Of a stretch of DNA of 64,000 nucleotides, positions 170-32,408 are shown piece by piece (within the stretch, counting starts at the first letter, position 1; each line of letters starts with the position of its first letter). The notes under the pieces were generated by a model that worked only from the letters and a program-made list of their open reading frames with translations, was not told where the DNA came from and ran no database searches. The stretch is from IMG/VR virus record IMGVR_UViG_3300032288_004964, positions 321,334 to 385,333 of that record. One strand, written 5' to 3'. Both the position numbers and the translations under genes were made by a program.

Positions 170-1252
170 ATGATTCATTACGACTTTAATGACATTCTAA
201 TTACGCCTGCTGTAACTTCAAGTATTAGATCAAGAAGTGAAATTAACCAACATCAAACTTTAATGGGTGAAACTAATTGGTTACCAGTTATTGTATCTCC
301 TATGGATACTGTTATTGGTCTAGATAACTGGGAACTTTATTTAGAAAATAAAATGCCTATTTGCTTTCCAAGAGGTATTTATCCAAGAACATATCCTGTT
401 CAATTTAGTGAAGATGATAGAGCAATGCTACAATGTTTTAAAGATGTAATCTTTTACTCATACTCTTTAGATGAAGCAAATGAATTAGTTCAATGGTTAA
501 TTAACAATCCTGGAAGTGATTTAGATGGTAATGTCCTAATTGATATCGCAAATGGTCATATGCAGCATATGGTTGATTTAGTTAAAGAACTCCGCAGTAG
601 AACAAAAATGAAGATTATGGTTGGTAATATTGCTAACCCTGATACTTATAAAGTTCTTTCCGAAGCAGGTGCTGATTTTATTAGAGTTGGTATTGGATTT
701 GGTGGTGGTTGTTTAACTGCTATGAATACTGGTGTTGGTTACTCTATGGCATCACTTGTTAAAAAGTGTGCTGATATTAAAGAACAAATGAGTTCAAATG
801 ATGAAAGAGTTGCTAGTATTGTAGCTGATGGTGGATTCCGTGAATATTCTGATATTATTAAAGCTCTGGCTTTAGGTGCGGATTATGTCATGTTGGGATC
901 TATCTTAAACAAATGTTTAGAATCTTCTGGTGATACTTATTGGAAAGGTATAAAGTTATCACCAGAGATTGCTAAATTTCTTTGGAAGAGAAAATTCAAA
1001 CTTGAAAAGAAATTCAGAGGAATGTCTACTAAAGAAGTTCAAAAGAAATGGGGTAAGAAAAAATTAACTACATCAGAGGGTGTGGTTAGAATGAGAACTG
1101 TAAAATATACACTTTCGGGTTGGAGAGAAAACTTTGAAGATTATTTAAAATCTACTATGTCTTATACTAATAGTCGGACATTAAATGACTTTATTGGGAA
1201 TGTTAAATGGACAATAATCTCTCAAAGCTCATTTAATAGATTTAATAAGTAA
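170..1252 (+). CDS. IMP dehydrogenase / GMP reductase family protein
   Basis: SPMDTV, IDIANGH, GADFIRVGIGFGGGCLT (catalytic Cys loop), IVADGG, ALALGADYVMLGS, FRGMST, SEG motifs. Confidence 0.9.
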   Translation: MIHYDFNDILITPAVTSSIRSRSEINQHQTLMGETNWLPVIVSPMDTVIGLDNWELYLENKMPICFPRGIYPRTYPVQFSEDDRAMLQCFKDVIFYSYSLDEANELVQWLINNPGSDLDGNVLIDIANGHMQHMVDLVKELRSRTKMKIMVGNIANPDTYKVLSEAGADFIRVGIGFGGGCLTAMNTGVGYSMASLVKKCADIKEQMSSNDERVASIVADGGFREYSDIIKALALGADYVMLGSILNKCLESSGDTYWKGIKLSPEIAKFLWKRKFKLEKKFRGMSTKEVQKKWGKKKLTTSEGVVRMRTVKYTLSGWRENFEDYLKSTMSYTNSRTLNDFIGNVKWTIISQSSFNRFNK

Positions 1253-1563: not shown

Positions 1564-2364
1564 CTAGCGTTTCACCATAAAGAAGAAACTTGAATTTGAC
1601 ATACCATTAACTGATTCTTCAACTTCTTTAACCTCTGCTTGTCCTTGAGATACTAAATCAGCTGAATTGATTTTAACAGAACCTGGTAATGTATAATCAT
1701 ATCTACCAGTTAAGTTACCTAATTGTATCTTACTATATCCAACAACATACTTAAAAAATAAATCATCTCTAAATAAGTTTTCTTGAGGTATGTTAGCATA
1801 AGCCTCCATAATAACATCATATTTAACATTAGTTAAAATATGTAATCTATGATTTAATTGGTTAAAGTTATATTTAAGTGTATATTTATTTAATTGATTT
1901 AACATATCAGACATATTATCTAATATAGTTTTGTAAACACCTAACTCACCAATTGTAGTAACATAAGATGATAAATAAGGTTGATTAGTAACACCTAAGT
2001 TTACTGATAAATTTGGTTGGTTAATACCTAATTGAAAAAGAGAAGATCCTCTTACTTCATAAAGATAACTAACAGATTGAATTTCACAAGGAACATTTAC
2101 ATAGTTATATTTTGTAAATTCTTCAGAAAAGAAAGCTTCTTTAACTATAAGAAAATACATCTTTTGAACAGCATATTGATAATTACGGTAGAACCAAGGT
2201 AAGGCTCTGGTTTCAATAATTTGTCTAACATTATTATCTGGTAGTGTTCTAGGAAGAGCACAGGATATAGTTAATTCATTTTGAACTAAGTCTACTAATT
2301 CTTCTATTGTATAACCCCCTTGATAAGGAACATAACTATTACCGTATCCATTAACATCTGACAT
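1564..2364 (-). CDS. T4 gp13-like neck / head-tail adaptor protein
   Basis: C-terminal YVVGYSKIQLGNLTGRYDYTLPGSVKINSADLVSQGQAEVKEVEE matches the gp13 pattern (QWGxNLxKFxGxxLPGGVxxNG...A..E..E). Confidence 0.7.
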   Translation of the reverse strand: MSDVNGYGNSYVPYQGGYTIEELVDLVQNELTISCALPRTLPDNNVRQIIETRALPWFYRNYQYAVQKMYFLIVKEAFFSEEFTKYNYVNVPCEIQSVSYLYEVRGSSLFQLGINQPNLSVNLGVTNQPYLSSYVTTIGELGVYKTILDNMSDMLNQLNKYTLKYNFNQLNHRLHILTNVKYDVIMEAYANIPQENLFRDDLFFKYVVGYSKIQLGNLTGRYDYTLPGSVKINSADLVSQGQAEVKEVEESVNGMSNSSFFFMVKR

Positions 2365-2417
2365 AAAAATAATTTCTTTTGTTTATATATTAATTTGGCA
2401 ACCTCACTTATTATTTG

Positions 2418-2425
2418 TATATTTG
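2418..2425 (+). promoter_or_regulatory. Bacteroidota sigma70-type -7 element
   Basis: TATATTTG; TTTG at 2394-2397 with 20-nt spacer; ATG follows after a 4-nt gap. Confidence 0.8.
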
Positions 2426-2429
2426 AAGT

Positions 2430-2615
2430 ATGAAAACAGGGAAAATAATCATCGGTAAAGTTACATTTGAGGATATCATGAAAGCTAATAAAAAAGCTTC
2501 AAGAGAAATGAATTTAGAGAATTCTACTGGTTGGAACTCTGTTAGAAAAACTCATAAATCTGTTAAAGATTATACCCGTAAACCTAAGCATAAAAAAAGC
2601 TATTCATTTGAATAG
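2430..2615 (+). CDS. small basic protein, possible ArfA-like ribosome rescue factor
   Basis: HKSVKDYTRKPKHK resembles ArfA KGSYxRKxKH; ends in TAG. Confidence 0.4.
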   Translation: MKTGKIIIGKVTFEDIMKANKKASREMNLENSTGWNSVRKTHKSVKDYTRKPKHKKSYSFE

Positions 2616-2623
2616 CCTTCTAT

Positions 2624-3682
2624 TTATACTGTAAAGTTTTTCGATCCTTTTAATTTCTCAAGAGTGTGTTTCTCATCAAGTTCTATGTTTTTAGGTATTC
2701 TAACATATATCTTAACATAAAGATCACCTAATCCATAATGAACATCAGGTATTCCTTTACCATTTACTCTATAAATCTTACCGTGTTCTGTTCCAGGTTC
2801 AATAGCTATTGTTAAGTCACCATGTGGTGTTTTAACTTTAACATTAGCACCAAGTATAGCATCTAAAACCGAAATAGTTTTTTCAATGTTAATATTGTTT
2901 CTATCTCTTGTAAAATATGTTTCTTTTATTTCTTCTATTATAATTTGAAGATTTCCAGGTAACCCATTTCTAGTGTAGTTACCAAATCCATTCATTGTTA
3001 GCTGAATATCATTTGAAACCCCTGCTGGTATTTCTACATCAACTGTTTGTTCTTTTGAAACAGTACCATCACCGTGACAATCACCACATTTACTTTTTAT
3101 TTGCTTACCTGATCCACCACAATCTGGACAAGTTGTAGCTGTTCTAATCTGACCAAATGGTGTGTTTTGAATAACGGTTCTTTGTCCTACACCATTACAA
3201 GGTAAACAATCCTTAACATCTGTTCCTCCTTGACCAGAACATTTTTCGCATCTATCTTGTCTTCTATACTTTAACTTCTTATTAGTACCTTTAAGAATTT
3301 CATCTATTGTTAAACTAACTTTAATTCTCAAATCAGAGCCTTTTGTTTGCCTAGGTTGTCTATTATATCTTTGACCAAAGATATCACCAAATTGACTAAA
3401 AATGTCATCCATGTTGAAACCATGACCTTGTTGACTAAATGGATTTCCTCCACCAAATGGATTACCGGATGCCGATCCAAATCTATCATAGTTTGATTTT
3501 TTTTCAGGATTTGACAATGTGTCATATGCCTCAGCAGCATCTTTGAATTTAGCTTCTGCTTCAGGGTTATCAGGGTTTTTATCGGGGTGATATTGCATAG
3601 CCATCTTTCGATAAGCCTTTTTAATCTCATCATCAGATGCACCCTTATCTACGCCTAGTATGTTATAATAATCTTTACTCAT
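2624..3682 (-). CDS. dnaJ: DnaJ chaperone
   Basis: J-domain with HPD, G/F region, four CxxCxGxG repeats, C-terminal GDLYV. Confidence 0.97.
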
Positions 3683-3691: not shown

Positions 3692-3712
3692 TTATATCAA
3701 ATTTTATGCCAA
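3692..3712 (-). promoter_or_regulatory. sigma54-like -24/-12 box upstream of dnaJ
   Basis: TTGGCATAAAATTTGATATAA (GG-N10-GA); 16/21 identical to the box upstream of dnaK. Confidence 0.55.
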
Positions 3713-4548: not shown

Positions 4549-5024
4549 TACTTACCTAAAATAATTTTTGGAAAACGGAATGGTTTTCCATTTAATGAAT
4601 AACCTTTACTAACAACATCAATAATTTTTGATTCACCGATTTCCATAACTTGAATTACTTCATGTATATCTTCATCATATTTTTCAGTTTGAATAACTTC
4701 AATGTTGTGTGACTTCAAAAATGTTTCTAATTTCTGAGCAATTAATTTAACACCACTTTTTGCTGATTCATCTTTGATATTTTTTAGAGCAATAGATAAA
4801 TCATTATCCATGTCAAGAATAGATGATATCATAGAAACCTTTGTATTGTTTTTGATATCTTCTTTTTCTTTAGTCATTCTTCTTTTGTAAGTTTCAAAAT
4901 CAGCATAAAGTCTAACATACTTATCTTCTGATTCTGTTAGTTTTGCTTCTAACTCTTGATACTTCGAAAGTAACTCATCAAAAGGAGTTACAATTCTTTC
5001 CGCGTTTTCTGTATTTTCTTCCAT
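4548..5024 (-). CDS. grpE: GrpE nucleotide exchange factor
   Basis: YVRLYADFETYKRR, DEDIHEVI, VVSKGYSLNGKPFRFPKI. Confidence 0.93.
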   Translation of the reverse strand: MEENTENAERIVTPFDELLSKYQELEAKLTESEDKYVRLYADFETYKRRMTKEKEDIKNNTKVSMISSILDMDNDLSIALKNIKDESAKSGVKLIAQKLETFLKSHNIEVIQTEKYDEDIHEVIQVMEIGESKIIDVVSKGYSLNGKPFRFPKIILGK

Positions 5025-5026
5025 AA

Positions 5027-5317
5027 TTATTGTAATACTTTTTCTAATTTTTCATTTCTTTCCCACCATTTAATATTATCATCAACTGTCCTAACAAAAA
5101 TAGGATCTAATTTTTGAATGTGATGTAACATCTTTGATTTAAATTTTTCCCAATATTCTTTACCAAACATTTCTAAGTTGGTAATTAAAATTGAGTATTG
5201 AATAATCTCAGAATCAGTTAAGTAAAGTTGAATACTTGTTCCTAATATTAAACAATTGTAATAATCTTTTCTTTCATTGAAGTTAAGACTTCCTCCAATA
5301 ATATCTAAATTAGCCAT
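5027..5317 (-). CDS. hypothetical protein with C-terminal tail motif
   Basis: ends WERNEKLEKVLQ. Confidence 0.75.
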   Translation of the reverse strand: MANLDIIGGSLNFNERKDYYNCLILGTSIQLYLTDSEIIQYSILITNLEMFGKEYWEKFKSKMLHHIQKLDPIFVRTVDDNIKWWERNEKLEKVLQ

Positions 5318-8652: not shown

Positions 8653-9246
8653 ATGAATATTGTTATACTTGGGGGACCAGGGAGTGGAAAAGGAACTATC
8701 TGTGAAAAACTTGTAGAAGAGTTTAATTATAAAATGGTTTGTGCTGGTGACTTACTTAGAGAAGAAAAAGCATCTGGTTCAGAATTAGGAAAGCAAATTG
8801 CTAAATTGATTGATGCTGGTAACTTAGTTCCTGATAATGTTATAACTGACATTATCTATAATGAATTTAGGAAACCTATTAGACTTGGTAAATTCTTTTT
8901 AGTAGATGGTTACCCAAGAAGTATAAAACAAGCAATTAGTCTAAGTCAAATGATTAATGTTCAAATTGTTCTTTGGTTAGAAGTAAGTGATGAAACAACT
9001 ATTAAAAGAAATTTGAATAGAGGTTTAACATCAGGTAGACCAGATGATGCAAATGAAGAAATCATTAAAAAGAGACTAGAAAATTATAAAGAAATGTCAG
9101 TTCCTATTAAAAGGTATTACAATGACTGTATTGTAGAGATTGATGGTGAGGGAACACCAGATGAAGTTTATCAAAGGATTATAGACACCTTGTTTGAAAA
9201 TGTAAGAGAACCAAGAGATGTCACTGATATTTTAGATGAAGAGTAA
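8653..9246 (+). CDS. adk: adenylate kinase
   Basis: LGGPGSGKGT P-loop, AGDLLREE, GNLVPD, DGYPRS, GRPDD. Confidence 0.93.
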   Translation: MNIVILGGPGSGKGTICEKLVEEFNYKMVCAGDLLREEKASGSELGKQIAKLIDAGNLVPDNVITDIIYNEFRKPIRLGKFFLVDGYPRSIKQAISLSQMINVQIVLWLEVSDETTIKRNLNRGLTSGRPDDANEEIIKKRLENYKEMSVPIKRYYNDCIVEIDGEGTPDEVYQRIIDTLFENVREPRDVTDILDEE

Positions 9247-9250
9247 AATG

Positions 9251-9274
9251 AAATCCAGATTTAATCTGGATTTT
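9251..9274 (+). terminator. hairpin terminator after adk
   Basis: aaatccagat-tta-atctggatttt. Confidence 0.65.
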
Positions 9275-9275
9275 T

Positions 9276-9285
9276 TAATATATAA
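9276..9285 (+). promoter_or_regulatory. late-promoter-like box
   Basis: TAATATATAA-agta-ATG(9290). Confidence 0.65.
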
Positions 9286-9289
9286 AGTA

Positions 9290-10630
9290 ATGAAACTATT
9301 TAGATATAAAGAATTTATAAAAGAAGGGTTAGAAGTTAAAAATTCAATTCCTACTTATGAACAAGCATTAGAATTATGTTCTATTGAAGAATCTCCATTT
9401 TATGAATCAAAAATGGAAGTAGATGAATATAATGTATCTGTTTTTAATTATAGACTTGCTCAATACAAAGACTTTTCAAATCCTATTCCTGAAAAGCCAG
9501 AATTAAAAGGATTTGAAATGAGAGGTTTAACTTTTATATTTAATAAAGATGGTTCTTTATTTAAAAGATATGTGTTGCTTGAAAAGTTTTTTAATTTAAA
9601 TCAAGTACCAGACTCTTTATACTCTGTTGTTAAAAACTACAAAATTAAGTTTGTTAATAATAAAGAAGATGGTTCAATTGCTTCTTTTGTTAAACTACCA
9701 AATGGTAAAGTTGTTGGTAAATCCAAAATGGGATTTGATAATGACCAAGCTAATGGTATAAATAGAATTTACAAAACTAATTCAGATATTAAAAAATTTG
9801 TTGATTGGGCTTTAGATAATGATATAGTCCCAGTATTCGAATATGTTGCTCCAAACAACCGTATTGTTCTAAGATATCCAGGTGAAGAATTAATCTTATT
9901 AAGATTAAGAGATAATAAAACAGGTAAGCATATTGATATTAGAGACCACTTGGATAAAGTTGGTAATATTAGAATTGCTCCTTTTGAAGATGAAATTAAA
10001 GATTTAGATACATTAATTGAATTAAACGCTACTCAAGTTGATAAAGAAGGTTCTATTGTTACTTGTGAAGATGAGAATGGTCATGACTTTTTCTTTAAGT
10101 TAAAAACACCTTGGTACTGTGAAAGACATGGTTTATTAACAAATGATATTTATAGAGAACATATTATTATTAATTATATCTTAGATGATAAGATAGATGA
10201 TATATTAGGTCAAATACCAGAAGAAGAAGTTGAGGCTCATCAAAGAATTAATAAGATTATTTCTATTGTCAAAAAAGCAATTTCTGACAAAGTGTCTGAA
10301 ATTGAAAAATCTTATGATGATTTTATTAAATCAGGTATTTCTAAAAAAGATTATGCTATAAAAAATAGAGTTGGTAACACTAACTTTGGTTTTGTTATGA
10401 ATATGGTTAAAGCAAATGATTTAAGAAAGATGTCTAAAGAAGAAATATTAGATATCTATGATAATATGGAAGAATATGAAAAGGCATTACAAAGATGTCA
10501 ACCATATGAAATGGCTAAAGAATGGATTAAAGATTTAACTAAGAGATTAAACCTTTCTAGAGAATGGCTAAAGAAAAAAGATCCAACTCTTTTCTTTCAA
10601 GAACCAGAAGAAAGTGATGATGATAATTAA
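9290..10630 (+). CDS. T4 Rnl1/RnlA-family RNA ligase with N-terminal tag (start revised from 9236)
   Basis: EMRGLTF, LEKFFNLN, KEDGS (motif I), FEYVAPNNRIVLRY, EGSIV, FKLKTPWY; starts MKLFRYKEFIKE. Confidence 0.9.
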   Translation: MKLFRYKEFIKEGLEVKNSIPTYEQALELCSIEESPFYESKMEVDEYNVSVFNYRLAQYKDFSNPIPEKPELKGFEMRGLTFIFNKDGSLFKRYVLLEKFFNLNQVPDSLYSVVKNYKIKFVNNKEDGSIASFVKLPNGKVVGKSKMGFDNDQANGINRIYKTNSDIKKFVDWALDNDIVPVFEYVAPNNRIVLRYPGEELILLRLRDNKTGKHIDIRDHLDKVGNIRIAPFEDEIKDLDTLIELNATQVDKEGSIVTCEDENGHDFFFKLKTPWYCERHGLLTNDIYREHIIINYILDDKIDDILGQIPEEEVEAHQRINKIISIVKKAISDKVSEIEKSYDDFIKSGISKKDYAIKNRVGNTNFGFVMNMVKANDLRKMSKEEILDIYDNMEEYEKALQRCQPYEMAKEWIKDLTKRLNLSREWLKKKDPTLFFQEPEESDDDN

Positions 10631-17340: not shown

Positions 17341-18267
17341 ATGGGTAATATAGGATATTGTTGTATTAATATCTCTCTAAATGAGGGTAAGAGTAAGAAA
17401 GAACAAATAACTGTCAATAGAGGAATGACTAAGAAAACATTTGAGACCAAAGGTCTTGGATATGTATCTGAATTAGCAGTACAGAATATTAATGATCTTG
17501 AGAAAATACTTCAATGGAATTTTAGAAACAATATTCTTGTTTATAGAATGTCAAGTGACATGTTCCCATGTATTGGCTTCTATAAATTGGAAGATTTGCC
17601 AAACTTTAAGCTTATATCTAATAAATTAAAATTAATAGGCGATTACTCAAAATCCAAAGGAATGAGACTTTCCTTTCACCCAACTCACTTCTGTATTCCA
17701 GCTAGTGAAAACCCAATTGTTGTAAAAAATGCTATTGATGAATTAGATAAACATGCTCAAATAATGGATATAATGGGGTTAGACCAGACACATTATTACC
17801 CAATTAATATACATGTTAACACAACTAAACCAACAAGAGAAGAAGCCGCTGAGAGATTTTGCCTTCAATTTTATAATCTAAGTGAATCTTGTCAAAAAAG
17901 ATTAGTAGTTGAAAATGATGATGGTCCAAATCAATATTCAACTAAAATTTTATATGATTTGATTTATAAAAAAATAGGAATTCCGATTACACATGATTTT
18001 CACCATCATAATTACGGACCTCAGGATATCTCACAAGAAGAAGCAATTAGACTTGCTTGTTCTACCTGGGGTGATATAACACCAATGACTCATATGAGTT
18101 CACCAAAAACATTAGAAGATAACTCAGGAAAACAAACAGCACATGCAGATTACATTTATGAGGAAATTAAAACATTTGGTCTTGACTTTGATACAGAGAT
18201 TGAGGCGAAAGCTAAAGACCTCGCAGTTATTAGATACAGAAATCAATTTAAAGTTCTTAAAGGGTGA
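17341..18267 (+). CDS. uvsE: UV-damage endonuclease (UvsE/UvdE)
   Basis: GYCCIN, YRMSSDMFP, RLSFHP, INIH, LVVEND, DFHHH, HADY, EAKAKDLA. Confidence 0.93.
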   Translation: MGNIGYCCINISLNEGKSKKEQITVNRGMTKKTFETKGLGYVSELAVQNINDLEKILQWNFRNNILVYRMSSDMFPCIGFYKLEDLPNFKLISNKLKLIGDYSKSKGMRLSFHPTHFCIPASENPIVVKNAIDELDKHAQIMDIMGLDQTHYYPINIHVNTTKPTREEAAERFCLQFYNLSESCQKRLVVENDDGPNQYSTKILYDLIYKKIGIPITHDFHHHNYGPQDISQEEAIRLACSTWGDITPMTHMSSPKTLEDNSGKQTAHADYIYEEIKTFGLDFDTEIEAKAKDLAVIRYRNQFKVLKG

Positions 18268-18493
18268 TCATGTCTTAATAAGACACTATACACATAAAAG
18301 AATAGAAGGTAAGATTGTTAAGATAACTTATAGTAAATGTAAATCTAATTCTAAATATTTTATACTATATAGGGTTGAATTTATAAGTGGTCCACAAGAT
18401 GAAATTATTAAGTATGACTTTTCTGACTTTGAATTAGAACATATAGATAAAGATAAAGAAAGAGATTGGAAATTAAATCAAATATTGAAATAA
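18143..18493 (+). CDS. hypothetical protein with C-terminal tail motif; true start uncertain
   Basis: KFLKGDHVLI beta-start pattern; ends ERDWKLNQILK; overlaps the uvsE 3' end. Confidence 0.6.
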   Translation: MQITFMRKLKHLVLTLIQRLRRKLKTSQLLDTEINLKFLKGDHVLIRHYTHKRIEGKIVKITYSKCKSNSKYFILYRVEFISGPQDEIIKYDFSDFELEHIDKDKERDWKLNQILK

Positions 18494-19550: not shown

Positions 19551-19578
19551 AAAAAGAGAGTCAAATGACTCTCTTTTT
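19551..19578. terminator. bidirectional intrinsic terminator
   Basis: aaaaagagagtc-aaat-gactctcttttt. Confidence 0.85.
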
Positions 19579-20051: not shown

Positions 20052-20555
20052 TTATTTTAATATTTCTTCTATTTTCATATCTCTTTCTTCATACTTTTCA
20101 GTTATATCTGCTAATCTAACTGTATATTTTGAAGTCATTGTTTCTAAGTTTACAAACTTAGTAATTGAAAACATTACAAGTTTTCTAAATTTCTTTTCAT
20201 TGAAAAAATTATCTAATTCATCATCACTATTAAAGTCAAAGTTACTAACCCTATAAGCCTTTGATACAAGATTACTACCTTCTATTTTAAAGATATTAAA
20301 AGATATTAGTGTTGATATAAATGATATTTTCTGCCAATGTTTATCTAAAAATGTTCCTAACCAAAGAGTTGGATCAACTGTAGCAACTCTAACATTAGTG
20401 TTCTCATGTCCCATTCTTTTGCTATTATCTAAAAGAAGTTTTAGACCTTCCATATTATACTCTGAAAATGGATAAATTGATATACTTTTTGGATCAAGAC
20501 TAATCTGTGGATCACTAGCTGACCAAATATTATGTTTTAATAGTTCCTCAAACAT
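20052..20555 (-). CDS. hypothetical protein with C-terminal tail motif
   Basis: ends ERDMKIEEILK. Confidence 0.75.
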   Translation of the reverse strand: MFEELLKHNIWSASDPQISLDPKSISIYPFSEYNMEGLKLLLDNSKRMGHENTNVRVATVDPTLWLGTFLDKHWQKISFISTLISFNIFKIEGSNLVSKAYRVSNFDFNSDDELDNFFNEKKFRKLVMFSITKFVNLETMTSKYTVRLADITEKYEERDMKIEEILK

Positions 20556-20968
20556 TATAAATCATATTTTTTTATTTCTATCCCAGCTTCTTTTAAGAAG
20601 TCTAAACCTGATGTATCTTTATAGTTTTCAAGATAAACTAACCTTTTTATTCCAGATTGTAGTATAAGTTTAGAACATTCTTTACAAGGTGAATGTGTTT
20701 GATATAAAGTACCACCTTCACAGGAATGTCCGTGTTTAGCACATTTTAAAATAGCGTTAGCTTCTCCGTGTATAACATACCAATTAGTATCACCATCACC
20801 ATTTTCACAAGAGTTATCAAATCCGGTTGGTGTGCCATTATATCCATCGGATATAATCATGCCGTTTTTAACTATTAAAGCACCTACTTGTTTTCTGGTG
20901 CAATGTGATAGTTTAGCCCACTCTGTAGCCATTTTAAGATAAACTATATCATACTTCTCTTGTTTCAT
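20555..20968 (-). CDS. dCMP deaminase
   Basis: SHCTRKQVGA, GYNGTP, HGEANAI, THSPCKEC. Confidence 0.93.
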   Translation of the reverse strand: MKQEKYDIVYLKMATEWAKLSHCTRKQVGALIVKNGMIISDGYNGTPTGFDNSCENGDGDTNWYVIHGEANAILKCAKHGHSCEGGTLYQTHSPCKECSKLILQSGIKRLVYLENYKDTSGLDFLKEAGIEIKKYDL

Positions 20969-21107
20969 CTGGGAACATTTTTTTTATTTTTTCTTTTCTT
21001 ATATCTTGTTTTTCTAACCCAATCATTTTCATAATCCAATCTGTTGAAAAGTATTTTTTACTGTATATACTTAACATATCTTTTATTAAATCTAATCTAC
21101 TTTTCAT
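20949..21107 (-). CDS. 52-aa portal (gp20)-fragment-like mini-protein with C-terminal tail (not in ORF track)
   Basis: Manual translation MKSRLDLIKDMLSIYSKKYFSTDWIMKMIGLEKQDIRKEKIKKMFPDETREV; overlaps both neighbours. Confidence 0.6.
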   Translation of the reverse strand: MKSRLDLIKDMLSIYSKKYFSTDWIMKMIGLEKQDIRKEKIKKMFPDETREV

Positions 21108-21285
21108 CAAATATTCTTTTTATTTTATTCTTTCTAATATTGGTCCTATATTTTCTAATAGCTCCTATAAAAGCAGATTGTGGATATATTCTACCATTAT
21201 TGTGTGTATTATCAAATGTTTGTAGAATACCTTTTAAGACAATTACCTTTTCATTAATATTAACTAATTTATCTTCTTCACTCAT
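21097..21285 (-). CDS. 62-aa prohead protease (gp21) N-terminal-fragment-like mini-protein with C-terminal tail
   Basis: VLKGILQTFDNTHNNGRIYPQSAF resembles gp21 IEGIFMQAEVVNRNKRLYP; ends NIRKNKIKRIFDEK. Confidence 0.65.
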   Translation of the reverse strand: MSEEDKLVNINEKVIVLKGILQTFDNTHNNGRIYPQSAFIGAIRKYRTNIRKNKIKRIFDEK

Positions 21286-21463
21286 CTGGAAATAATCTTT
21301 TTATTTTTTCTTTTCTGATATTAGCTCTTTCATCTTTAAGTAGATTATTGATAACACTACCAACCATTGGATTAGTAACAAACCAATCACCGGATCCTCT
21401 TCTTGATTTATCAGCAATCATAGATGATGCTTTTAATAATTTATCAAGTAAGTCTTTCTGCAT
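21278..21463 (-). CDS. 61-aa major capsid protein (gp23)-fragment-like mini-protein with C-terminal tail
   Basis: LLKASSMIADKSRRGSGDWFVTNPMVGSVI resembles gp23 IA..T.RG.GNFI..S..V...L; ends NIRKEKIKRLFPDE. Confidence 0.65.
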   Translation of the reverse strand: MQKDLLDKLLKASSMIADKSRRGSGDWFVTNPMVGSVINNLLKDERANIRKEKIKRLFPDE

Positions 21464-22235
21464 GATTAATTTTAGTTTTTACATTCCAATCTCTTGGTAA
21501 ATACTGACATTGATTATTTTCTAAAAAGTGACTTCTCCACATTTCCACAAAAGATTGTATATCAGTTATTTGACTCATAACAATTTGCCCATGAGTTTTA
21601 TTCAAAATAGTTGTTCTAACCTCTGAAATCTCATTTAGCTTTTTCTTAGATAGTCTTTTGATAGAGAATCTATTTTTTAATTCTGACTTTAAATACTTAA
21701 TTCTTTTTGTAGGAATTTTACTTAAATCTTCTTTGAGTAAAGTCATTGCCATTTTACTAAACTTAATAAATTCTTTATCCTGAGTTGTTTCTCCATTAAC
21801 TGGAGCATTATACTCATTTGCTAAAAAGTCTTTTAATTTATCCGCTTGTCTTTCATATCTTTCGTGACATTGAACACAAAGTGAAAGAACATCATGAAAG
21901 TTATGTGATTTAAGACTTATTGGAAAGTATTTGCGATAACAATAAGGAACAACGTGATGTCTAGTTAAGTATTCTTCAGATCCGCAGCAAACGCACTTGT
22001 TGCTCATTTCTGTTAATCCAAATTCTTTATTATGATTACCTAATCCTTGTGGTTGAAACTTTAACTTAATAGTTAAAGGTTTTTCTTTGATGATATCTGC
22101 TAAATTTCTATTAAGATACCAATTAGCTTTTTTATCATCACATCTAAACATAAGAATACCACCAGGTGAAAACACCTGGCAGTTTCCATAAATCTTTCGG
22201 TTTTTAGTTGCTCCGTATGATGATATTAAACTCAC
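21444..22235 (-). CDS. HNH-type nuclease resembling the EXD2 C-terminal domain
   Basis: YGNCQVFSPGG..MFRCDDKKANWYL, CVCCG, RHHVVPYCYRKYFP, SHNFHDVLSLCVQCH. Confidence 0.8.
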   Translation of the reverse strand: MSLISSYGATKNRKIYGNCQVFSPGGILMFRCDDKKANWYLNRNLADIIKEKPLTIKLKFQPQGLGNHNKEFGLTEMSNKCVCCGSEEYLTRHHVVPYCYRKYFPISLKSHNFHDVLSLCVQCHERYERQADKLKDFLANEYNAPVNGETTQDKEFIKFSKMAMTLLKEDLSKIPTKRIKYLKSELKNRFSIKRLSKKKLNEISEVRTTILNKTHGQIVMSQITDIQSFVEMWRSHFLENNQCQYLPRDWNVKTKINHAERLT

Positions 22236-22789
22236 GACTTTTTGTCAATCTGTAATATGCCTAGTTCTACTGGTGTTTTTCTACCAAATATTAGAACTGA
22301 TACTTTAACTTTTTTATCTTTAATTTCTTCAATTGTTCCAAAGAATCCATTGAAAGGTCCATCAAGAACTTTTACTTCTTCTCCTACAACAAAAGTAGCT
22401 TCTGGTTCTAGTTCTTCTTTTGATTCTTCATGTTTACCTAACATGCTATTTACTTCAGCTTGTGAAAGAGGTTGAACTCCACCAGCTCTATTAGTTAAGA
22501 ATCCTTGAGCACCATTAACTCCTTTTAGGAAATATTTCAATTCACCAATTGCGTTGGTTTCAATAAAAATGTATCCAGGAAAAAGAACTTTTTCTCTCAT
22601 TACCTTTTTACCATTCTTTAGAAAAAAGCTTTTCTCAATAGGAACAATAACTTGACCTACCTTTCCAAAAAGATCTCCTTTTTCTGCTTCTTTAATTAAT
22701 CTCTCAGATACACTTTTTTCTCTGTTAGATTGTGCTCTAACTACATACCATTTCATTGTAGTTTGTTTTTCCATAGTTGCTGTATTCAT
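22232..22789 (-). CDS. nusG: transcription factor NusG
   Basis: WYVVRAQSNRE, LFPGYIFIE, VKVLDGPFNGF (KOW), VLIFGRKTPVEL. Confidence 0.95.
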   Translation of the reverse strand: MNTATMEKQTTMKWYVVRAQSNREKSVSERLIKEAEKGDLFGKVGQVIVPIEKSFFLKNGKKVMREKVLFPGYIFIETNAIGELKYFLKGVNGAQGFLTNRAGGVQPLSQAEVNSMLGKHEESKEELEPEATFVVGEEVKVLDGPFNGFFGTIEEIKDKKVKVSVLIFGRKTPVELGILQIDKKS

Positions 22790-25125: not shown

Positions 25126-25540
25126 GTTTTCTTATGTTGCTTTCTCTTTTCAACTTTAAATCCTGATATGAATTATCAATGATTTTATCTAAAGCATCCT
25201 TTTGTAATCTTATATTTACATCAGTTATAATCTTTGCATATTTTTTTGCAAATTCAATATTCTCATCTTTATATTCATTGTAATCATCTCGTGATAAAAT
25301 CACTAATCCTGTTTCTGGACAAACACAAAAATGAATTCTTTGTGTTAATATTGATAAGCCAAGTGCATTGTTTGTTCTGCTTATCATTTTTGTATCTATG
25401 TCGATAGAATAATAAAACTCTTTCTTTTTCTTATCAGTATAGATATCTATTTCTATTTCTTCTAATCTATACTCAATTAAATCATCAATAAATTCTGATA
25501 ATTTATTTATCATGTAATCAGTCACTAATAATAGAATCAA
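25115..25540 (-). CDS. hypothetical protein with C-terminal tail motif (likely start ATG 25513)
   Basis: ends LKRESNIRKLIG. Confidence 0.7.
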   Translation of the reverse strand: MILLLVTDYMINKLSEFIDDLIEYRLEEIEIDIYTDKKKKEFYYSIDIDTKMISRTNNALGLSILTQRIHFCVCPETGLVILSRDDYNEYKDENIEFAKKYAKIITDVNIRLQKDALDKIIDNSYQDLKLKRESNIRKLIG

Positions 25541-25919
25541 TTTTTCTATCTCTTTCTAAGATTAAAAACTTTCTTTCTAAAAAAGTTGATATTTTGTCTG
25601 GTAAACTAACACCTTGTTTAAGTAATTCGTCATAATATGGTTTTCCCAAAACATTTATACAAGCTATAATCGATACCACATTACTATCTTTATATCCTTC
25701 AATTTCAACATCTTCTCCTAAAATATGATATGTGCTTTTTGCTGATATTCCTTGTAAAGTAGTATAGGTTGATCCTGCTGTAGTTATTGTACCAGAAGTT
25801 ATTGTAGATGATCCAGATCCATATATTCCATATGCACCATATGCAACACTTGATCCAGTTAGACCATATCCTATAGCTGATGTGTGCACATTATTTCCGT
25901 TGATATTTACAAATCCCAT
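25518..25919 (-). CDS. hypothetical protein, G/S/T-rich N-half, C-terminal tail motif
   Basis: ends ERDRKIDSIISD. Confidence 0.75.
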   Translation of the reverse strand: MGFVNINGNNVHTSAIGYGLTGSSVAYGAYGIYGSGSSTITSGTITTAGSTYTTLQGISAKSTYHILGEDVEIEGYKDSNVVSIIACINVLGKPYYDELLKQGVSLPDKISTFLERKFLILERDRKIDSIISD

Positions 25920-28422: not shown

Positions 28423-30267
28423 TTATTTTAATAGTTCAGTTTTTCTTAGATCGGAGCTTTTACCAAACCAAATATCAAGTGATTTATCTGATACTTCATC
28501 TTTGGTAATAAGAGTCATTCTTGGTGAGTTAATAATATCTTGATACTCATCATCAACAAGTGCTGCTAAACCTTTCTTATACTTAATATCAAATTGTTTC
28601 AAATCATTCTTTTCAACAAATTCATTATATTCAGTTTGAGTATAAAAAAGAACTTTCTTTTTAGTTTTTGATTTAGGAATAGCAACTACAATAGGAGTTT
28701 CAACTTTATAAATCATTCTTCTATCAAACATATCAGGCCAATACTTATGAAAGAAGTTTAATAATAAACTAGCAATAGAGTTACCATCAACATCAGCATC
28801 AACATAGAAAAGTATTCTACCATATCTCAAATCTCTTAAATCTACTTTCTGTCCTAACTTTAAACCAATAGCTGCCATTAAATTAACAACCTCTTCGTTT
28901 AAAACTAGTTTTTGATTAGTCATCTCAGACACATTTACAAATTTACCTTTAAGTGCAAAAGCACCCATAGTTTCCGGTGTTCTATATTTTCTAAAAGCAG
29001 AGATAGCTGAATCACCTTCAAATAAACCAATAGAACATTTCCAACGGTCTTTACCTTTAGCATCAATAAGTTTCTCAACTTTAATCTTACCAAGTTTTTT
29101 ATTTAAATCTCTTTGGAGTTTTGAATCTTCAGCATTTTTCTTTTGTTGAATCCAATCTAATATTGAATTAACAATCTCAGATTTTAAAATTGATTGAATT
29201 AACTTTGTTGGTACTTCAAATGTAGAACCAAAATCTTTAACCTCAGTAATTAACTTTTCTTTTGTTTGAGAAGAGAATGATGGATTAATTACAGTAGAAT
29301 CTAAAAATAGAAACATATGATTTCTTAATTCACCTGGTTTAACATCTACCTTATGTTTTTTCTGAAAATACTCTATTAAAGAAACTTGTATTTGTCTCAT
29401 AACATATTCAACATGTGTTCCACCATCATAAGTATCAGTAGAGTTAGCAAATGAAACTTGTTGAAATCCATTTTCAGAAAGTGCAATACCTACTGACCAA
29501 GTTTTATCTTTTTTAGATTCATAAAAGTAAGTAGGAGTATATAATTTAATATAATCTTCAAATGCTTTGAAGTTAATTAATTTACCATTAAAATAAACTT
29601 TAAGATTAGTATTACAGGCTGCAATATCATAAACTCTTTTTTCAAGCATTTTGAAATGATCATCATCTATTCCTTTAAGTTCAAATTTATCAAAATCTAC
29701 TAAATAATTAATTTCTGTAAATCCTTTGCTACTTTTTTTAATTTTAGCAGGTGTTCTTTTTCTCATATTATTAGAGAAAGTTTGTGTGTAATGATTTAAA
29801 CCATCACAAGTAGTTACTGTAAACTCCTTTGAATATATGTTTGTAAGAGTAGAACCTACACCATTTGTACCAGCCCAAGATCTTTCTTCACTATCATCAA
29901 AGTTAGAACCTGCTTTAAGATTAGAAAAAATCATTTCGGGAATCCATTCTTTGTGTTGTGTGTGTTTTACAACAGGAATACCACCGTTATCCCAGATGTT
30001 TATATAATTTGTTTCCCTATTAATATCTACTTTAATAGTATTTAATTTAGATTCTTTTCTTTTACTTTCATCAACTGAGTTAGTAACAATCTCATCAAAT
30101 ATTTTTAATAAACCAGGATTATAGGTTACTTCTTTTTGAATCATCTTATCTTCTTCAATAATCCATTTATTTGCTTTGTGTGGCTTAATTGAGCCAATAT
30201 ACATACCAGGTCTTAATATAACATGGTCAATGTCATCTAACTTTTGAAACTTTTTATCTACTGACAT
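28423..30267 (-). CDS. type II topoisomerase large subunit (T4 gp39+60-like)
   Basis: RPGMYIGS, EIVTNSVDE, DNGGIP, GTNGVG, EGDSA, ALKGK, DADVDG, KYKKGL. Confidence 0.95.
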   Translation of the reverse strand: MSVDKKFQKLDDIDHVILRPGMYIGSIKPHKANKWIIEEDKMIQKEVTYNPGLLKIFDEIVTNSVDESKRKESKLNTIKVDINRETNYINIWDNGGIPVVKHTQHKEWIPEMIFSNLKAGSNFDDSEERSWAGTNGVGSTLTNIYSKEFTVTTCDGLNHYTQTFSNNMRKRTPAKIKKSSKGFTEINYLVDFDKFELKGIDDDHFKMLEKRVYDIAACNTNLKVYFNGKLINFKAFEDYIKLYTPTYFYESKKDKTWSVGIALSENGFQQVSFANSTDTYDGGTHVEYVMRQIQVSLIEYFQKKHKVDVKPGELRNHMFLFLDSTVINPSFSSQTKEKLITEVKDFGSTFEVPTKLIQSILKSEIVNSILDWIQQKKNAEDSKLQRDLNKKLGKIKVEKLIDAKGKDRWKCSIGLFEGDSAISAFRKYRTPETMGAFALKGKFVNVSEMTNQKLVLNEEVVNLMAAIGLKLGQKVDLRDLRYGRILFYVDADVDGNSIASLLLNFFHKYWPDMFDRRMIYKVETPIVVAIPKSKTKKKVLFYTQTEYNEFVEKNDLKQFDIKYKKGLAALVDDEYQDIINSPRMTLITKDEVSDKSLDIWFGKSSDLRKTELLK

Positions 30268-31064: not shown

Positions 31065-32408
31065 ATGGTAACAGAAAAAAGTATTACAGAATTCTTATCC
31101 AATGAGTACAAAGAATTTGCGATGTATTCAATTGAAGGCCGTGCTATTCCTTCGGTTATTGATGGTTTTAAACCAACTCAAAGAAAAATTATACACGGAT
31201 CATCTCAGATTTGGAAAACAGGAAATGAAAAAACCTTAAAGATATTTCAACTATCTGGATATATTGCAGCAAATTGTTTTTATCATCACGGTGATGCGTC
31301 ATTATCAAATGCCATTATTAATATGGCCCAGAGATTTAAGAACAATGCCCCTCTTTTAGAAGAAGAAGGTCAGTTTGGTTCTTTAAGATCACCACAAGCT
31401 GGTGCTCCTCGTTACATAGGTACTAAATTATCTGATAACTTTAGACTAATCTATAAAGACTTTGACCTATTAGATTATAAAGAAGAAGAAGGTGAGTCAA
31501 TTGAACCTAAATACTTTTTACCTATTGTTCCAGCTGTTTTATTAAATGGTTCATCAGGTATTGCTGTAGGATTTGCCTCTAATGTTTTAAATAGAGATAT
31601 TAAGTCTATTATAGATGCTTGTATTAAAGTTTTAGCTGGTAAAAATCCAGGTGAAGTTAAACCATCTTTAAATGAGTTTACTGGAGAATTTATACAAGAT
31701 AAAGAAAATAACAAAAGATGGATTATTAGAGGTAGATTTGAAAGAGCTAATACAACAACTGTTAAAATTAGTGAACTTCCTCCTTCAATGACTTATGAGA
31801 AGTATGAGGAAATATTAGATAAGTTAGCGGATGATAAACTAATTGTCTCTTATGATGATAATTGCAAAGATAATATTGATTATGTTATTAAATTCACCAG
31901 AGCAGATTTAGAGAAATTAGATGATGAAAAATTAGTTAAGTTATTGAAACTTGAAGAATCATCAACTGAGATTTTCTCAACACTAGATGAGAATGGTAAA
32001 TTAAAAATATTTGAAAATACATCTGATATTATTAAATACTTTGTTGATTTTAGATTAACTTATTACCATAAAAGAAAACAATTCCTCTTAGACAAAATGA
32101 ATCGTGACCTTAAAATATTAGGTAACAGAGGTAGATTTATTAAAGCGATTCTTGATGGTAAGTTAAAAGTAAATAATGTTCCAAAGGTTCAAATTATTGA
32201 AGGAATTGAAGCAATGAGTTTAGATAAGATAGATGATTCTTATGACTATCTTTTAAGAATGCCTATCTACTCTTTAACAAAAGAAGTATTTGATAAATTA
32301 AAAGAAGATTTTTCAGCTAAGAAAGAAGAAATAAAAGCTTTAGAAGCAACTGATCCTAAAGATATGTATGTTCAGGATTTAACTGAATTAAAAAAGAAAT
32401 TTAAATGA
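31065..32408 (+). CDS. type II topoisomerase medium subunit (T4 gp52-like)
   Basis: RAIPSVIDGFKPTQRK, YHHGDASL, AGAPRY (catalytic Tyr), NGSSGIAVGF. Confidence 0.95.
   Translation: MVTEKSITEFLSNEYKEFAMYSIEGRAIPSVIDGFKPTQRKIIHGSSQIWKTGNEKTLKIFQLSGYIAANCFYHHGDASLSNAIINMAQRFKNNAPLLEEEGQFGSLRSPQAGAPRYIGTKLSDNFRLIYKDFDLLDYKEEEGESIEPKYFLPIVPAVLLNGSSGIAVGFASNVLNRDIKSIIDACIKVLAGKNPGEVKPSLNEFTGEFIQDKENNKRWIIRGRFERANTTTVKISELPPSMTYEKYEEILDKLADDKLIVSYDDNCKDNIDYVIKFTRADLEKLDDEKLVKLLKLEESSTEIFSTLDENGKLKIFENTSDIIKYFVDFRLTYYHKRKQFLLDKMNRDLKILGNRGRFIKAILDGKLKVNNVPKVQIIEGIEAMSLDKIDDSYDYLLRMPIYSLTKEVFDKLKEDFSAKKEEIKALEATDPKDMYVQDLTELKKKFK

What the first reader, a model, noticed from the sequence alone, without database searches (positions are those of the whole stretch)
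20949..21463. Three coupled mini-genes resembling fragments of major capsid, prohead protease and portal, each fused to the same C-terminal tail: candidate decoy cassette
Seen: three overlapping 52-62 aa ORFs (one absent from the ORF track) in the nusG/HNH/dCMP-deaminase gene run, all ending in (N/D)IRK(E/N)KIK(R/K)(L/I/M)F(P)DE with similar DNA. Recognised from T4-family motifs: IADKSRRGSGDWFVTNPMV resembles the gp23 RG.GNF region; LKGILQTFDNTHNNGRIYP resembles the gp21 N-terminus but lacks the catalytic His/Ser; RLDLIKDMLSIYSKKYFSTDWIMKMI resembles the gp20 portal C-terminal RL.L....PY.GKYFS...I segment. Established: capsid and portal proteins trigger defence systems (Lit/Gol, CapRel, Avs2), and prohead protease has been reported to activate some CBASS systems. 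Inference: these are epitope mimics made ahead of morphogenesis that occupy immune sensors, or dominant-negative inhibitors of head assembly by rival phages.
Basis: partly seen in the sequence, partly recalled or inferred. Interest (0 to 1): 0.95.

Follow-up and report, generated by a model that had tools for sequence, protein, structure and literature searches.

The report
Conserved mini-genes from head-protein fragments
A giant freshwater phage carries three tiny coupled genes, each an old copy of a short conserved piece of its capsid, capsid-protease or portal protein joined to a tail motif that about a hundred other proteins of this phage group also end in; they are real, selected genes whose job is unknown, most plausibly molecular mimics.

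Summary
Three overlapping minus-strand ORFs (61, 62 and 52-53 aa) lie between a NusG-like gene (plus an inserted HNH endonuclease) and dCMP deaminase, and all end in the same tail. With the tail removed, their profiles hit only the capsid protein, protease-scaffold and portal of this megaphage clade, each at the homologous position. They are not debris. They stay intact across relatives with saturated synonymous divergence, pN/pS is 0.54 for the bait and 0.15 for the tail, and the protease-type family has about 68 distinct clusters, nearly all 32-82 aa.

Two facts change the picture. First, the tail is not special to these genes. It is a basic variant of a clade-wide C-terminal motif carried by 14 ORFs in the window and 107 in a complete relative, against 1.65 expected. 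Second, other tail-bearing mini-genes carry pieces of DNA polymerase B, ribonucleotide reductase, scaffold repeats, tail fibre and other capsid regions.

The array is modular (A, A+B, A+C, C alone, hybrids), and the HNH gene is a separate insertion. Function is untested. The best guess is "bait-and-tail" mimics made before late proteins.

The parts
21278..21463 (-). Mini-gene A: capsid-protein (gp23-type) A-domain segment plus tail
   Evidence: ORF. 12 of 17 family members hit Pfam Gp23, best E 1.1e-7. The tail-less profile hits 46 of 46 clade capsid proteins at the homologous site and nothing else among 414 ORFs. It also hits T4 gp23 residues 356-388. Relatives are intact at 43-97% identity. 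The AF2 model is a helical hairpin, pLDDT 70.6.
21097..21285 (-). Mini-gene B: prohead-protease N-terminal segment (no catalytic residues) plus tail
   Evidence: ORF. Hits phrog_207 and phrog_31489. All annotated tblastn hits lie in gp21-type protease genes. The top PDB hit is T4 gp21 5jbl, residues 59-88. The profile hits 39 of 46 clade protease-scaffold proteins at residues about 24-54. The exhaustive search finds 70 representatives, 68 of them 32-82 aa. AF2 predicts a disordered N-terminal part and a confident helix at 36-60.
20949..21110 (-). Mini-gene C: portal C-terminal segment plus tail; likely start is the ATG at 21107
   Evidence: ORF. Pfam Portal_T4 positions 387-427 of 433, E 0.003. 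All tblastn hits lie in the portal gene of jumbo phages (most rows annotated portal). The profile hits 9 of 46 clade portals at residues about 459-496 and no other ORF. Relatives. This is the weakest of the three homologies.
21291..21321 (-). Tail-coding repeat of A (RKEKIKRLF)
   Evidence: Direct-repeat family D1. Codon variation is mostly at third positions. Tail pN/pS is 0.15 with a normal pS of 0.45.
21110..21140 (-). Tail-coding repeat of B (RKNKIKRIF)
20974..21004 (-). Tail-coding repeat of C (RKEKIKKMF)
21444..22235 (-). HNH endonuclease gene: a separate free-standing insertion between the NusG-like gene and A, not part of the mini-gene unit
   Evidence: Weak HNH hits. Absent from relatives that keep the mini-genes (L001, L007, L008 and one further contig). 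Present in others (L002, L003, L006, L014-L017).
22232..22789 (-). NusG-like gene, the conserved upstream neighbour in the same operon
   Evidence: Pfam NusG and KOW. Synteny in all relatives.
20555..20968 (-). dCMP deaminase gene, translationally coupled to C (its ATG lies inside C's tail codons)
20052..20555 (-). 167-aa ORFan ending in the general form of the C-terminal motif (ERDMKIEEILK)
   Evidence: one of 14 window ORFs with the motif
19551..19578 (.). Bidirectional terminator hairpin closing the minus-strand operon

Best explanation
A, B and C are three separately translated, translationally coupled micro-protein genes in a transcription and nucleotide-metabolism operon of a freshwater megaphage. 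The source is a 385-kb IMG/VR contig related to the 635-642 kb uncultured phages LR745206 and LR756502.

Each gene has two parts. The 'bait' is a 35-45-residue copy, made long ago, of a conserved segment of a head-assembly protein. For A this is the capsid A-domain segment, for B the protease N-terminus ending before the catalytic His, and for C the portal C-terminal segment. The 'tail' is a C-terminal helix carrying R-K-x-K-I-K-(R/K)-(L/I/M)-F. This is a basic variant of a motif that about a hundred otherwise unrelated ORFan proteins of this clade also end in.

Shown: the ORFs, the homologies, long-term retention as small ORFs, purifying selection on bait and tail at the protein level, modular gain and loss by recombination at the tail repeat, and the generality of the tail.

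Inferred mechanism: they work like microProteins. They are made from a replication and nucleotide-metabolism operon, so presumably before the late head proteins, though timing was not measured. The bait occupies a factor that recognises that segment in newly made, unassembled protein. That factor is most plausibly a host pattern-recognition defence sensor. The tail docks the micro-protein onto a hub shared by all tail-bearing proteins.

I put about 0.9 on 'real, selected, fragment-derived micro-proteins with a generic tail'. I put about 0.35 on the mimic mechanism with a host factor as the target.
For: Real genes:
- Intact orthologues across relatives whose NusG and deaminase genes have dS of 0.4-1.6.
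- Pooled pN/pS is 0.54 for the bait (Fisher p 3e-7) and 0.15 for the tail (p 3e-5), with an ordinary tail pS of 0.45.
- The B family has 70 representatives at 50% clustering, 68 of them 32-82 aa, with G-R-x-Y of the protease motif nearly invariant.

Homology:
-.

Old and independent of the parent genes:
- No nucleotide similarity between mini-genes and full-length genes within one complete genome.
- Residues conserved in the parents stay conserved in the minis although the parental fold is gone. This points to selection for resemblance.

Accessory behaviour:
- Relatives carry A, A+B, A+C, C alone or hybrids.

Timing and context:
- The operon holds an exonuclease, NusG, deaminase and thioesterase and ends at a terminator.

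Sources overlap known defence triggers:
- Capsid protein, portal, DNA polymerase, protease and tail fibre (for the literature; for the extra mini-genes).

Tail is a protein motif on a predicted helix:
-.
Against: - No binding partner, expression data or phenotype is available.
- Most known sensors are activated by binding their trigger, so a binding fragment could switch them on rather than block them.
- Avs-type sensors read whole folds over large interfaces, which a 40-residue piece cannot offer.
- CBASS senses protease activity, not a protease epitope.
- The baits are largely buried core segments in the parent folds.
- Only about 8-10 of 68 tail-bearing minis in the complete relative have a recognisable parent, so mimicry may be incidental to a family defined by its tail.
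- Seeing only 'most conserved motifs' is partly detection bias.
- The C homology is weak.
Confidence: 0.35

Rival explanations
1. Tail-family proteins with incidental baits. The three belong to a very large clade-specific family of small proteins defined by the C-terminal motif. Gene fragments were simply raw material for new N-termini. Function depends on the tail's partner (for example loading into the capsid, a clamp-like hub or a protease) and not on resemblance to head proteins.
For: 107 motif-bearing ORFs in LR745206.1 and 14 in the window. All carriers tested are Pfam-less ORFans. Most minis have no recognisable parent. The tail is under much stronger constraint than the bait and is the confidently predicted part of the models.
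Against: The baits keep the parental motif residues over deep divergence. Examples are the protease G-R-I-Y-P across about 68 clusters and the capsid G-x-x-N-Y-x-V motif. Bait pN/pS is clearly below 1. A family indifferent to the bait should have lost that resemblance.
Confidence: 0.25
2. Subunit poisons or timers of head assembly. The fragments bind the full-length capsid, protease or portal proteins or their assembly partners. One option is that they hold the phage's own protease and head proteins in check outside the procapsid. The other is that they poison assembly of co-infecting related phages.
For: The fragments come from oligomeric assembly proteins, and a scaffold-repeat mini-gene also exists. 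The central motif of A resembles canonical T4-type capsid proteins (19-32 bits) at least as well as the clade's own (15-24 bits), which could spare self. The protease-activity sensing reported in PMC12991175 would give a motive for restraining free protease.
Against: The genes are expressed from a replication and nucleotide-metabolism operon and are not linked to the head module. They are dispensable in close relatives. Stoichiometry against a massively expressed capsid protein is unfavourable. Polymerase and reductase active-site motifs are unlikely assembly poisons.
Confidence: 0.2
3. Neutral debris kept open only as spacer cistrons. The ORFs are remnants of captured gene pieces. They persist because ribosomes must read through them to reach the downstream gene by stop-start coupling.
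For: Every junction is a stop-start overlap with the next ATG inside the tail codons. Recombinant hybrids and truncated B copies exist.
Against: Selection acts on amino-acid sequence, not only on openness. The family is large, old and constant in size. The motif ties to the upstream ORF's C-terminus and does not sit at a fixed distance from the next start: 0-9 residues follow it, and some carriers have no closely following gene (coordinates).
Confidence: 0.07
4. Nucleic-acid-level element. Either a repeat-spacer-like array whose fragments guide or pair with head-gene DNA or RNA, or the tail DNA acting as a promoter or translation-initiation signal.
For: Repeat-plus-variable-segment layout. The tail DNA is A-rich and sits just upstream of the next start.
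Against: No nucleotide similarity to the parent genes. Tail changes are synonymous at the normal rate and rarely non-synonymous. An unbiased DNA matrix scan finds the motif almost only in frame at ORF ends. Promoter-like sites are not enriched.
Confidence: 0.03
5. Cargo or scars of the HNH homing endonuclease: flanking exon pieces carried along from head genes.
For: The HNH gene abuts A. Capsid genes can be endonuclease targets, as in the Bacillus phage SP-15 capsid gene split by an endonuclease.
Against: Relatives have A and B, or C, without the HNH gene at the same site. Mini-genes elsewhere in these genomes have no adjacent endonuclease.
Confidence: 0.03

Closest known systems
Eukaryotic microProteins (small single-domain proteins derived from larger regulators, e.g. 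LITTLE ZIPPER or Id proteins; from my own knowledge)
   Same: Small proteins that keep one interaction segment of a larger parent and lack its functional parts, encoded as separate genes. The logic is titration or formation of non-productive complexes.
   Different: These are phage genes whose parents are virion and replication proteins. They have an added common C-terminal motif, no partner is demonstrated, and I know of no description of this in phages.
Defence triggers that are short capsid motifs: T4 Gol peptide with Lit, and CapRel with the major capsid protein (named; details from my own knowledge)
   Same: A short stretch of a T4-type capsid protein is what a host factor reads.
   Different: Those are parts of the full-length capsid protein that activate defence. 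Here the pieces are free-standing genes in a replication and nucleotide-metabolism operon, presumably early or middle. A maps to T4 gp23 residues about 356-388, not to the Gol region.
C-terminal cargo-loading peptides of encapsulins and the T4 capsid-targeting sequence (from my own knowledge; T4 reviews listed)
   Same: A short terminal peptide shared by many unrelated proteins, which could direct them to one destination such as the interior of an HK97-fold shell.
   Different: The T4 signal is N-terminal and is cleaved off. The sequences are unrelated. No virion data exist for this clade, and the real capsid, portal and protease-scaffold proteins do not carry the motif.
PIP-box and clamp-binding C-terminal motifs (from my own knowledge)
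   Same: Position at the extreme C-terminus, and spacing of key residues at 1-4-7-8 with two hydrophobic residues at the end.
   Different: Position 1 is D, N or K rather than Q. Lysines are conserved at other positions. About 15% of the proteome would be clamp clients. Not tested.
Mobile regulatory cassettes (PeSL) that shuffle small genes in T4-type phage genomes (from my own knowledge)
   Same: Small accessory genes bounded by a repeated sequence that promotes modular gain, loss and shuffling.
   Different: Here the repeat is coding sequence, selected at the protein level, not an intergenic promoter-stem-loop.
Free-standing HNH homing endonucleases of T4-type phages (seg and mob genes; from my own knowledge)
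   Same: Explains the 263-aa HNH gene, which is precisely inserted between two conserved genes and is present or absent among relatives.
   Different: It does not explain the mini-genes, which exist without it.

Membership tests
Major capsid protein Gp23 (PF07068) | Sequence similarity to the family profile | tested here: met
   12 of 17 A-type proteins match, best E 1.1e-7. The window copy scores 15.7 bits, below the 24.4 cut-off. 46 of 46 clade capsid proteins are hit at the homologous site.
Major capsid protein Gp23 (PF07068) | Complete HK97-type fold able to build a shell | tested here: not met
   61 aa covering profile positions 222-259 of 376. The model is a helical hairpin. A is a fragment, not a capsid protein.
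T4 gp21-type prohead protease | N-terminal conserved segment | tested here: met
   phrog_207 and phrog_31489. T4 gp21 5jbl residues 59-88 is the top PDB hit. 39 of 46 clade proteases are hit.
T4 gp21-type prohead protease | Catalytic His and Ser | tested here: not met
   B ends before the G-E-F-D-H-P motif that follows this segment in the clade's real protease and covers only profile positions 36-79 of 519.
T4 gp20-type portal (PF07230) | Similarity to the family profile | tested here: inconclusive
   E 0.003-0.009 for 2 of 8 members. All tblastn hits lie in portal genes of jumbo phages at E about 4. 9 of 46 clade portals are hit at the homologous site and nothing else is. No PDB portal is hit.
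T4 gp20-type portal (PF07230) | Full-length portal able to form a dodecamer | tested here: not met
   52-53 aa covering profile positions 387-427 of 433.
Clade-wide C-terminal motif family | R-[DNKESQ]-x-[KR]-[ILV]-x-x-[ILVM]-[LFIYM] within 12 residues of the C-terminus | tested here: met
   A, B and C all match. Window: 14 C-terminal against 1 internal. LR745206.1: 107 against 1.65 expected from shuffles.
microProtein-like mimic | Derived from one segment of a larger protein and lacking its functional parts | tested here: met
microProtein-like mimic | Forms a non-productive complex with the parent's partner | not testable with these tools
   Needs binding or genetic assays. Only single-chain structure prediction was available.
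Anti-defence decoy | Inhibits or escapes a named defence system | not testable with these tools
   No host, no defence system and no assay. The literature gives motive only.
Homing-endonuclease cargo | Mini-genes travel only with the endonuclease | tested here: not met
   L001, L007 and L008 carry mini-genes without the HNH gene.
Repeat-spacer (CRISPR-like) array | Non-coding array whose spacers match targets at nucleotide level | tested here: not met
   Coding and under protein-level selection. No nucleotide matches to parent genes.
One gene read by programmed frameshifts | The three frames always occur together as one unit | tested here: not met
   Each ORF has its own ATG and occurs alone or in other combinations in relatives.

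The most novel reading that the evidence does not exclude
These megaphages run a genome-wide 'bait-and-tail' system. More than a hundred small proteins per genome share a C-terminal docking helix. A subset displays conserved snippets of the phage's own core proteome: capsid, protease, scaffold, portal, DNA polymerase, ribonucleotide reductase and tail fibre. These would be made ahead of the late proteins to blind or jam host pattern-recognition immunity, or rival phages, that read exactly those hard-to-mutate motifs.
Probability: 0.2. Interest if true: 0.9.

Novelty: categorically new. Interest (0 to 1): 0.8.

Why it matters
If the mimic reading is right, this would be a new counter-strategy against immune sensors that target conserved viral proteins: a library of epitope-sized mimics rather than escape mutation or a dedicated inhibitor. 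It would also give ready-made peptide probes for finding such sensors in Bacteroidota-type hosts.

Two results stand even if that reading is wrong:
- Phages can keep short fragments of essential genes as independent selected genes for long periods, which is one route by which ORFans are born.
- A single C-terminal motif marks roughly one gene in seven of a 635-kb phage genome. That implies an unknown hub or sorting step in megaphage biology that can be tested directly.

Tried and rejected
1. Stop-codon recoding. Window stops are TAA 72, TGA 12 and TAG 4, and opening TAG or TGA does not lengthen the longest ORF. Beyond B's TAG there are only 12 more codons. Standard code was kept.
2. Head genes inside the window. 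None found by local tblastn or by PHROG scans of the ten largest ORFs.
3. Tail as a repeated DNA element elsewhere in the window. Not found at up to 3 mismatches.
4. Finding the megaphage capsid gene by tblastn with foreign capsid proteins. The hits were swamped by thousands of T4-like records. Solved by fetching LR745206.1 in 13 pieces and searching them locally.
5. The window contig's own capsid gene. It was not among the 80 loci returned, so clade relatives stood in for it.
6. Function of motif carriers. Pfam finds nothing for 20 of them.
7. Literature on the motif or on capsid-fragment decoys. Nothing relevant found.
8. Motif in a cultured relative. It is absent from 40 kb of Flavobacterium phage immuto.
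9. Polymerase motif-B minis. They give no Pfam hit, so that assignment rests on the K-x-x-x-N-S-x-Y-G pattern alone.
10. Fold search of the models. Not run, because a 60-residue helical hairpin gives meaningless matches.
It was rerun without that row.
Full report
WHAT IS THERE

On the minus strand of the window three small ORFs follow one another in three different frames:
- A: 21278..21463, 61 aa.
- B: 21097..21285, 62 aa.
- C: 20949..21110, 52 aa from the ATG at 21107.

Each ends in N/D-I-R-K-E/N-K-I-K-R/K-L/I/M-F, followed by 3-7 residues. In every case the final GATGA of the tail holds the ATG of the next cistron: A into B, B into C, and C into dCMP deaminase. The tail DNA is a 31-47-nt direct repeat at 81-87% identity. 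A back-translated pattern finds the three copies against 0.04 expected.

The run lies in one operon: 5'-3' exonuclease, a 131-aa ORF, a NusG-like gene, an HNH gene, A, B, C, dCMP deaminase, a 167-aa ORFan and a thioesterase. A bidirectional terminator at 19551-19578 closes it. The window has 28.7% G+C and shows no sign of stop-codon recoding.

WHERE IT COMES FROM

The window is identical to part of IMG/VR contig 3300032288_004964, which is 385 kb. The nearest database records are the 635-kb and 642-kb uncultured phages LR745206.1 and LR756502.1, at about 70% nucleotide identity. Relatives come from freshwater metagenomes.

THE HEAD-PROTEIN RESEMBLANCES ARE REAL HOMOLOGIES

Window copies alone give marginal hits:
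- A matches Pfam Gp23 positions 222-259 of 376, E 0.01.
- B matches phrog_207 and phrog_31489 (head maturation protease), E about 5e-4.
- C matches Pfam Portal_T4 positions 387-427 of 433, E 0.003.

In tblastn against 50,697 phage records, the annotated hits lie under capsid genes for A, gp21-type protease genes for B and portal genes for C.

With relatives the signal becomes firm:
- 12 of 17 A-type proteins hit Gp23, best E 1.1e-7.
- 11 of 26 B-type proteins hit phrog_207.

I then fetched a complete relative piecewise and found its true head module: portal at 193109-194857, protease-scaffold at 198486-200669 and capsid protein at 200731-202431. I also fetched 80 further capsid loci of the clade.

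Among 414 ORFs of 46 head-module loci, the tail-less profiles behave as follows:
- The A profile hits 46 of 46 capsid proteins, at residues about 400-450.
- The B profile hits 39 of 46 protease-scaffold proteins, at residues about 24-54.
- The C profile hits 9 of 46 portals, at residues about 459-496.
- Nothing else is hit.

Against the PDB, B's best hit is T4 gp21 (5jbl, residues 59-88). A hits T4 gp23 residues 356-388. C hits no portal. B stops immediately before the catalytic-His motif.

THEY ARE SELECTED PROTEIN-CODING GENES, NOT DEBRIS

Evidence for retention as small genes:
- A-type ORFs are intact in 9 protein clusters and 9 viral contigs at 43-97% identity.
- B-type ORFs fall into 23 close clusters.
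- In an exhaustive profile search of 1.84 billion representatives, B finds 70 proteins, 68 of which are 32-82 aa. The protease-like core and the tail are both conserved in them.

Evidence for selection on amino-acid sequence:
- Pairwise dN/dS is 0.3-0.6 for A, 0.3-0.7 for C and about 0.2 for B. The neighbours give 0.07-0.35 (NusG) and 0.02-0.11 (deaminase).
- Over five independent A pairs, pN/pS is 0.54 for the bait (p 3e-7) and 0.15 for the tail (p 3e-5). The tail's synonymous divergence is ordinary at 0.45. The tail is therefore conserved as protein, not as DNA.

Evidence that the minis are independent of their parent genes:
- Mini-genes and their parent genes in one genome share no nucleotide similarity.
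- This rules out recent copying, gene conversion and any antisense or guide role.

AlphaFold2 predictions:
- A is a helical hairpin, pLDDT 70.6.
- B has an unstructured bait followed by a confident helix at 36-60 that includes the tail.

THE ARRAY IS MODULAR AND THE HNH GENE IS SEPARATE

Relatives show these arrangements between NusG and the deaminase:
- NusG, A, B.
- NusG, A, a hybrid ORF, B.
- NusG, HNH, A, B.
- NusG, HNH, A, C, deaminase.
- NusG, HNH, A, deaminase.
- NusG, C, deaminase.

Further points:
- The last residues of each tail change with whichever gene follows.
- One hybrid ORF joins B's start to A's end.
- B's DNA is nearly identical between lineages whose flanking genes differ (dS 0.04 against 0.3-0.6).

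Recombination at the shared tail sequence explains this plasticity. The HNH gene is a free-standing endonuclease inserted between NusG and A in some genomes only.

THE TAIL IS A CLADE-WIDE C-TERMINAL MOTIF

A DNA matrix built from the 27-nt tail was scanned over the 635-kb relative. It finds the motif almost only in frame, 0-9 codons before the stop of ORFs of 36-150 aa.

Written as a protein pattern, R-[DNKESQ]-x-[KR]-[ILV]-x-x-[ILVM]-[LFIYM], the counts are:
- Window: within 12 residues of the C-terminus in 14 ORFs, against one internal site in 28,474 residues.
- Complete relative: 107 ORFs, against 1.65 expected from residue shuffles and 23 internal sites.

All carriers tested are ORFans with no Pfam domain. 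The real capsid, portal and protease-scaffold proteins lack the motif. So does a 40-kb stretch of a cultured Flavobacterium phage. The tail on A, B and C is the K-rich, F-ending variant of this motif.

THE BAITS ARE NOT ONLY HEAD PROTEINS

Tail-pattern scans of IMG/VR and own-genome searches found tail-bearing mini-genes made from:
- the capsid C-terminus, which shares a 9-residue identity with the clade's own capsid protein;
- the capsid spine-helix region;
- the 14-residue repeats of the protease-scaffold protein (50-55% identity, E 1e-17);
- polymerase B motif A (Pfam E 0.003);
- the polymerase B K-x-x-x-N-S-x-Y-G motif, including one on the window's own contig (L071);
- a chimera of a ribonucleotide-reductase motif and polymerase motif A;
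- a DUF2793 tail-fibre motif (E 3.6e-4).

A further B-type gene sits directly upstream of a gene I read from its sequence as dihydrofolate reductase, in LR756504.1. Only about one in seven tail-bearing minis has a recognisable parent, and recognition favours conserved motifs.

HOW IT MOST LIKELY WORKS

Shown: small, translated-looking, coupled genes, each with a parent-like bait and a generic helical tail. They are old, selected, accessory and modular, and they sit in a replication and nucleotide-metabolism operon.

Inferred: because the parental fold is gone yet the parental motif residues stay conserved, selection is probably for resemblance. That is, each mini binds something that recognises that segment in the unassembled parent. 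The operon context, dispensability and faster evolution fit a host-interaction or competition role better than a core assembly role. The parents overlap the known triggers of bacterial pattern-recognition defences. I therefore favour microProtein-like mimics that occupy a host factor, with the tail docking to a shared hub. My confidence in this is about 0.35.

Rivals:
- A tail-defined family whose baits are incidental (0.25).
- Poisons or timers of head assembly and of the protease (0.2).
- Spacer cistrons (0.07).
- A nucleic-acid element (0.03).
- Endonuclease cargo (0.03).

Arguments against the decoy version:
- Binding usually activates sensors.
- Avs sensors read whole folds.
- CBASS reads protease activity.

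COMPARISON AND NOVELTY

None of the three is a member of the capsid, protease or portal families in any functional sense; they are fragments. The nearest concept is the eukaryotic microProtein. The nearest analogues for the tail are terminal sorting or docking peptides, such as encapsulin cargo peptides, the T4 capsid-targeting sequence and PIP-type motifs. I found no description of either feature in phages. I rate it as lying outside known kinds, with the caveat that the function is inferred.

Noticed in passing
window: 4012-4548(-), 5027-5317(-), 18143-18493(+), 20052-20555(-), 25518-25919(-), 44299-44721(+), 45356-45688(+), 46760-47032(+), 47041-47334(+), 47889-48638(+), 50171-50464(+): Eleven further ORFs end in the same C-terminal motif (consensus E-R-D-x-K-I-x-x-I-L plus 1-7 residues). 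With A, B and C that makes 14 C-terminal instances against 1 internal. A complete relative has 107 against 1.65 expected. All carriers are ORFans.
   Followed up: yes
window 21444-22235 (-): The HNH endonuclease gene is precisely inserted between the NusG-like gene and mini-gene A. It is absent at the same site in several relatives, so it behaves as a free-standing homing endonuclease.
   Followed up: partly
window 52633-54129 (+): A second, larger HNH-type endonuclease ORF (498 aa, phrog_1314, E 5e-42).
   Followed up: no
L071:1953-2117 (same 385-kb contig as the window, other region); L106: A 54-aa mini-gene with a polymerase-B-like K-x-x-x-N-S-x-Y-G motif plus the tail. It is wedged by stop-start overlaps between a phosphoesterase-like gene and a 109-aa gene that itself ends in the general motif.
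   Followed up: partly
L003:4200-4328, L005, L007:345-476: Here B is cut short by a TGA after 42-43 codons. A degenerate tail (R-P-E-K-R-I-K-K-R-L-F) follows in frame and overlaps a terminator hairpin, so tail-less B copies are common.
   Followed up: partly
L008:275-406: A hybrid 43-aa ORF joins the first residues of B to the last 24 residues of A. This is direct evidence of unequal recombination within the array.
   Followed up: partly
window 21097-21285 versus L003, L005, L007: B's DNA is almost identical across lineages (dS 0.04) although the adjacent A and NusG genes differ at dS 0.3-0.6. This suggests recent lateral exchange of the B cassette.
   Followed up: partly
L076:221-478, L129:4918-5154, L026: 78-85-aa ORFs equal to the capsid C-terminus, with a tail-like R-K-R-K-I-N-K-I-F stretch inserted internally rather than at the end. 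Each is preceded by another tail-bearing mini-gene (M-S-F-A-x-G-W type) of unknown parent.
   Followed up: partly
L009:14977-15159 (LR756504.1): A B-type mini-gene lies directly upstream, with an ATGA overlap, of a gene that looks like dihydrofolate reductase from its sequence alone (not profile-tested). This is a second case of a mini-gene preceding a nucleotide-metabolism gene.
   Followed up: no
P0102: A 100-aa protein with the same protease N-terminal segment but a C-terminal hydrophobic helix instead of the tail. This suggests protease N-terminal fragments have been recruited more than once.
   Followed up: no
window 28423-30267(-), 31065-32408(+), 9236-10630(+), 61662-62846(+): T4-style replication and RNA-repair genes: split topoisomerase II subunits, an RNA ligase 1-like gene and a tRNA nucleotidyltransferase. 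The 28423-30267 subunit is read from a homologous ORF in L002, not profile-tested. The 629-aa ORF 11580-13469 matches phrog_22485 (unknown function) at E 4e-248.
   Followed up: no
L113 (IMG/VR contig): GrpE-like gene ~4804-5241(-) (rc 268..705), DnaJ-like gene ~2843-3895(-) (rc 1614..2666), mini-gene 2670-2846(-): By eye, from sequence, this clade member appears to encode GrpE- and DnaJ-like chaperone genes. A tail-fibre-motif mini-gene is coupled directly upstream of the DnaJ-like gene.
   Followed up: no
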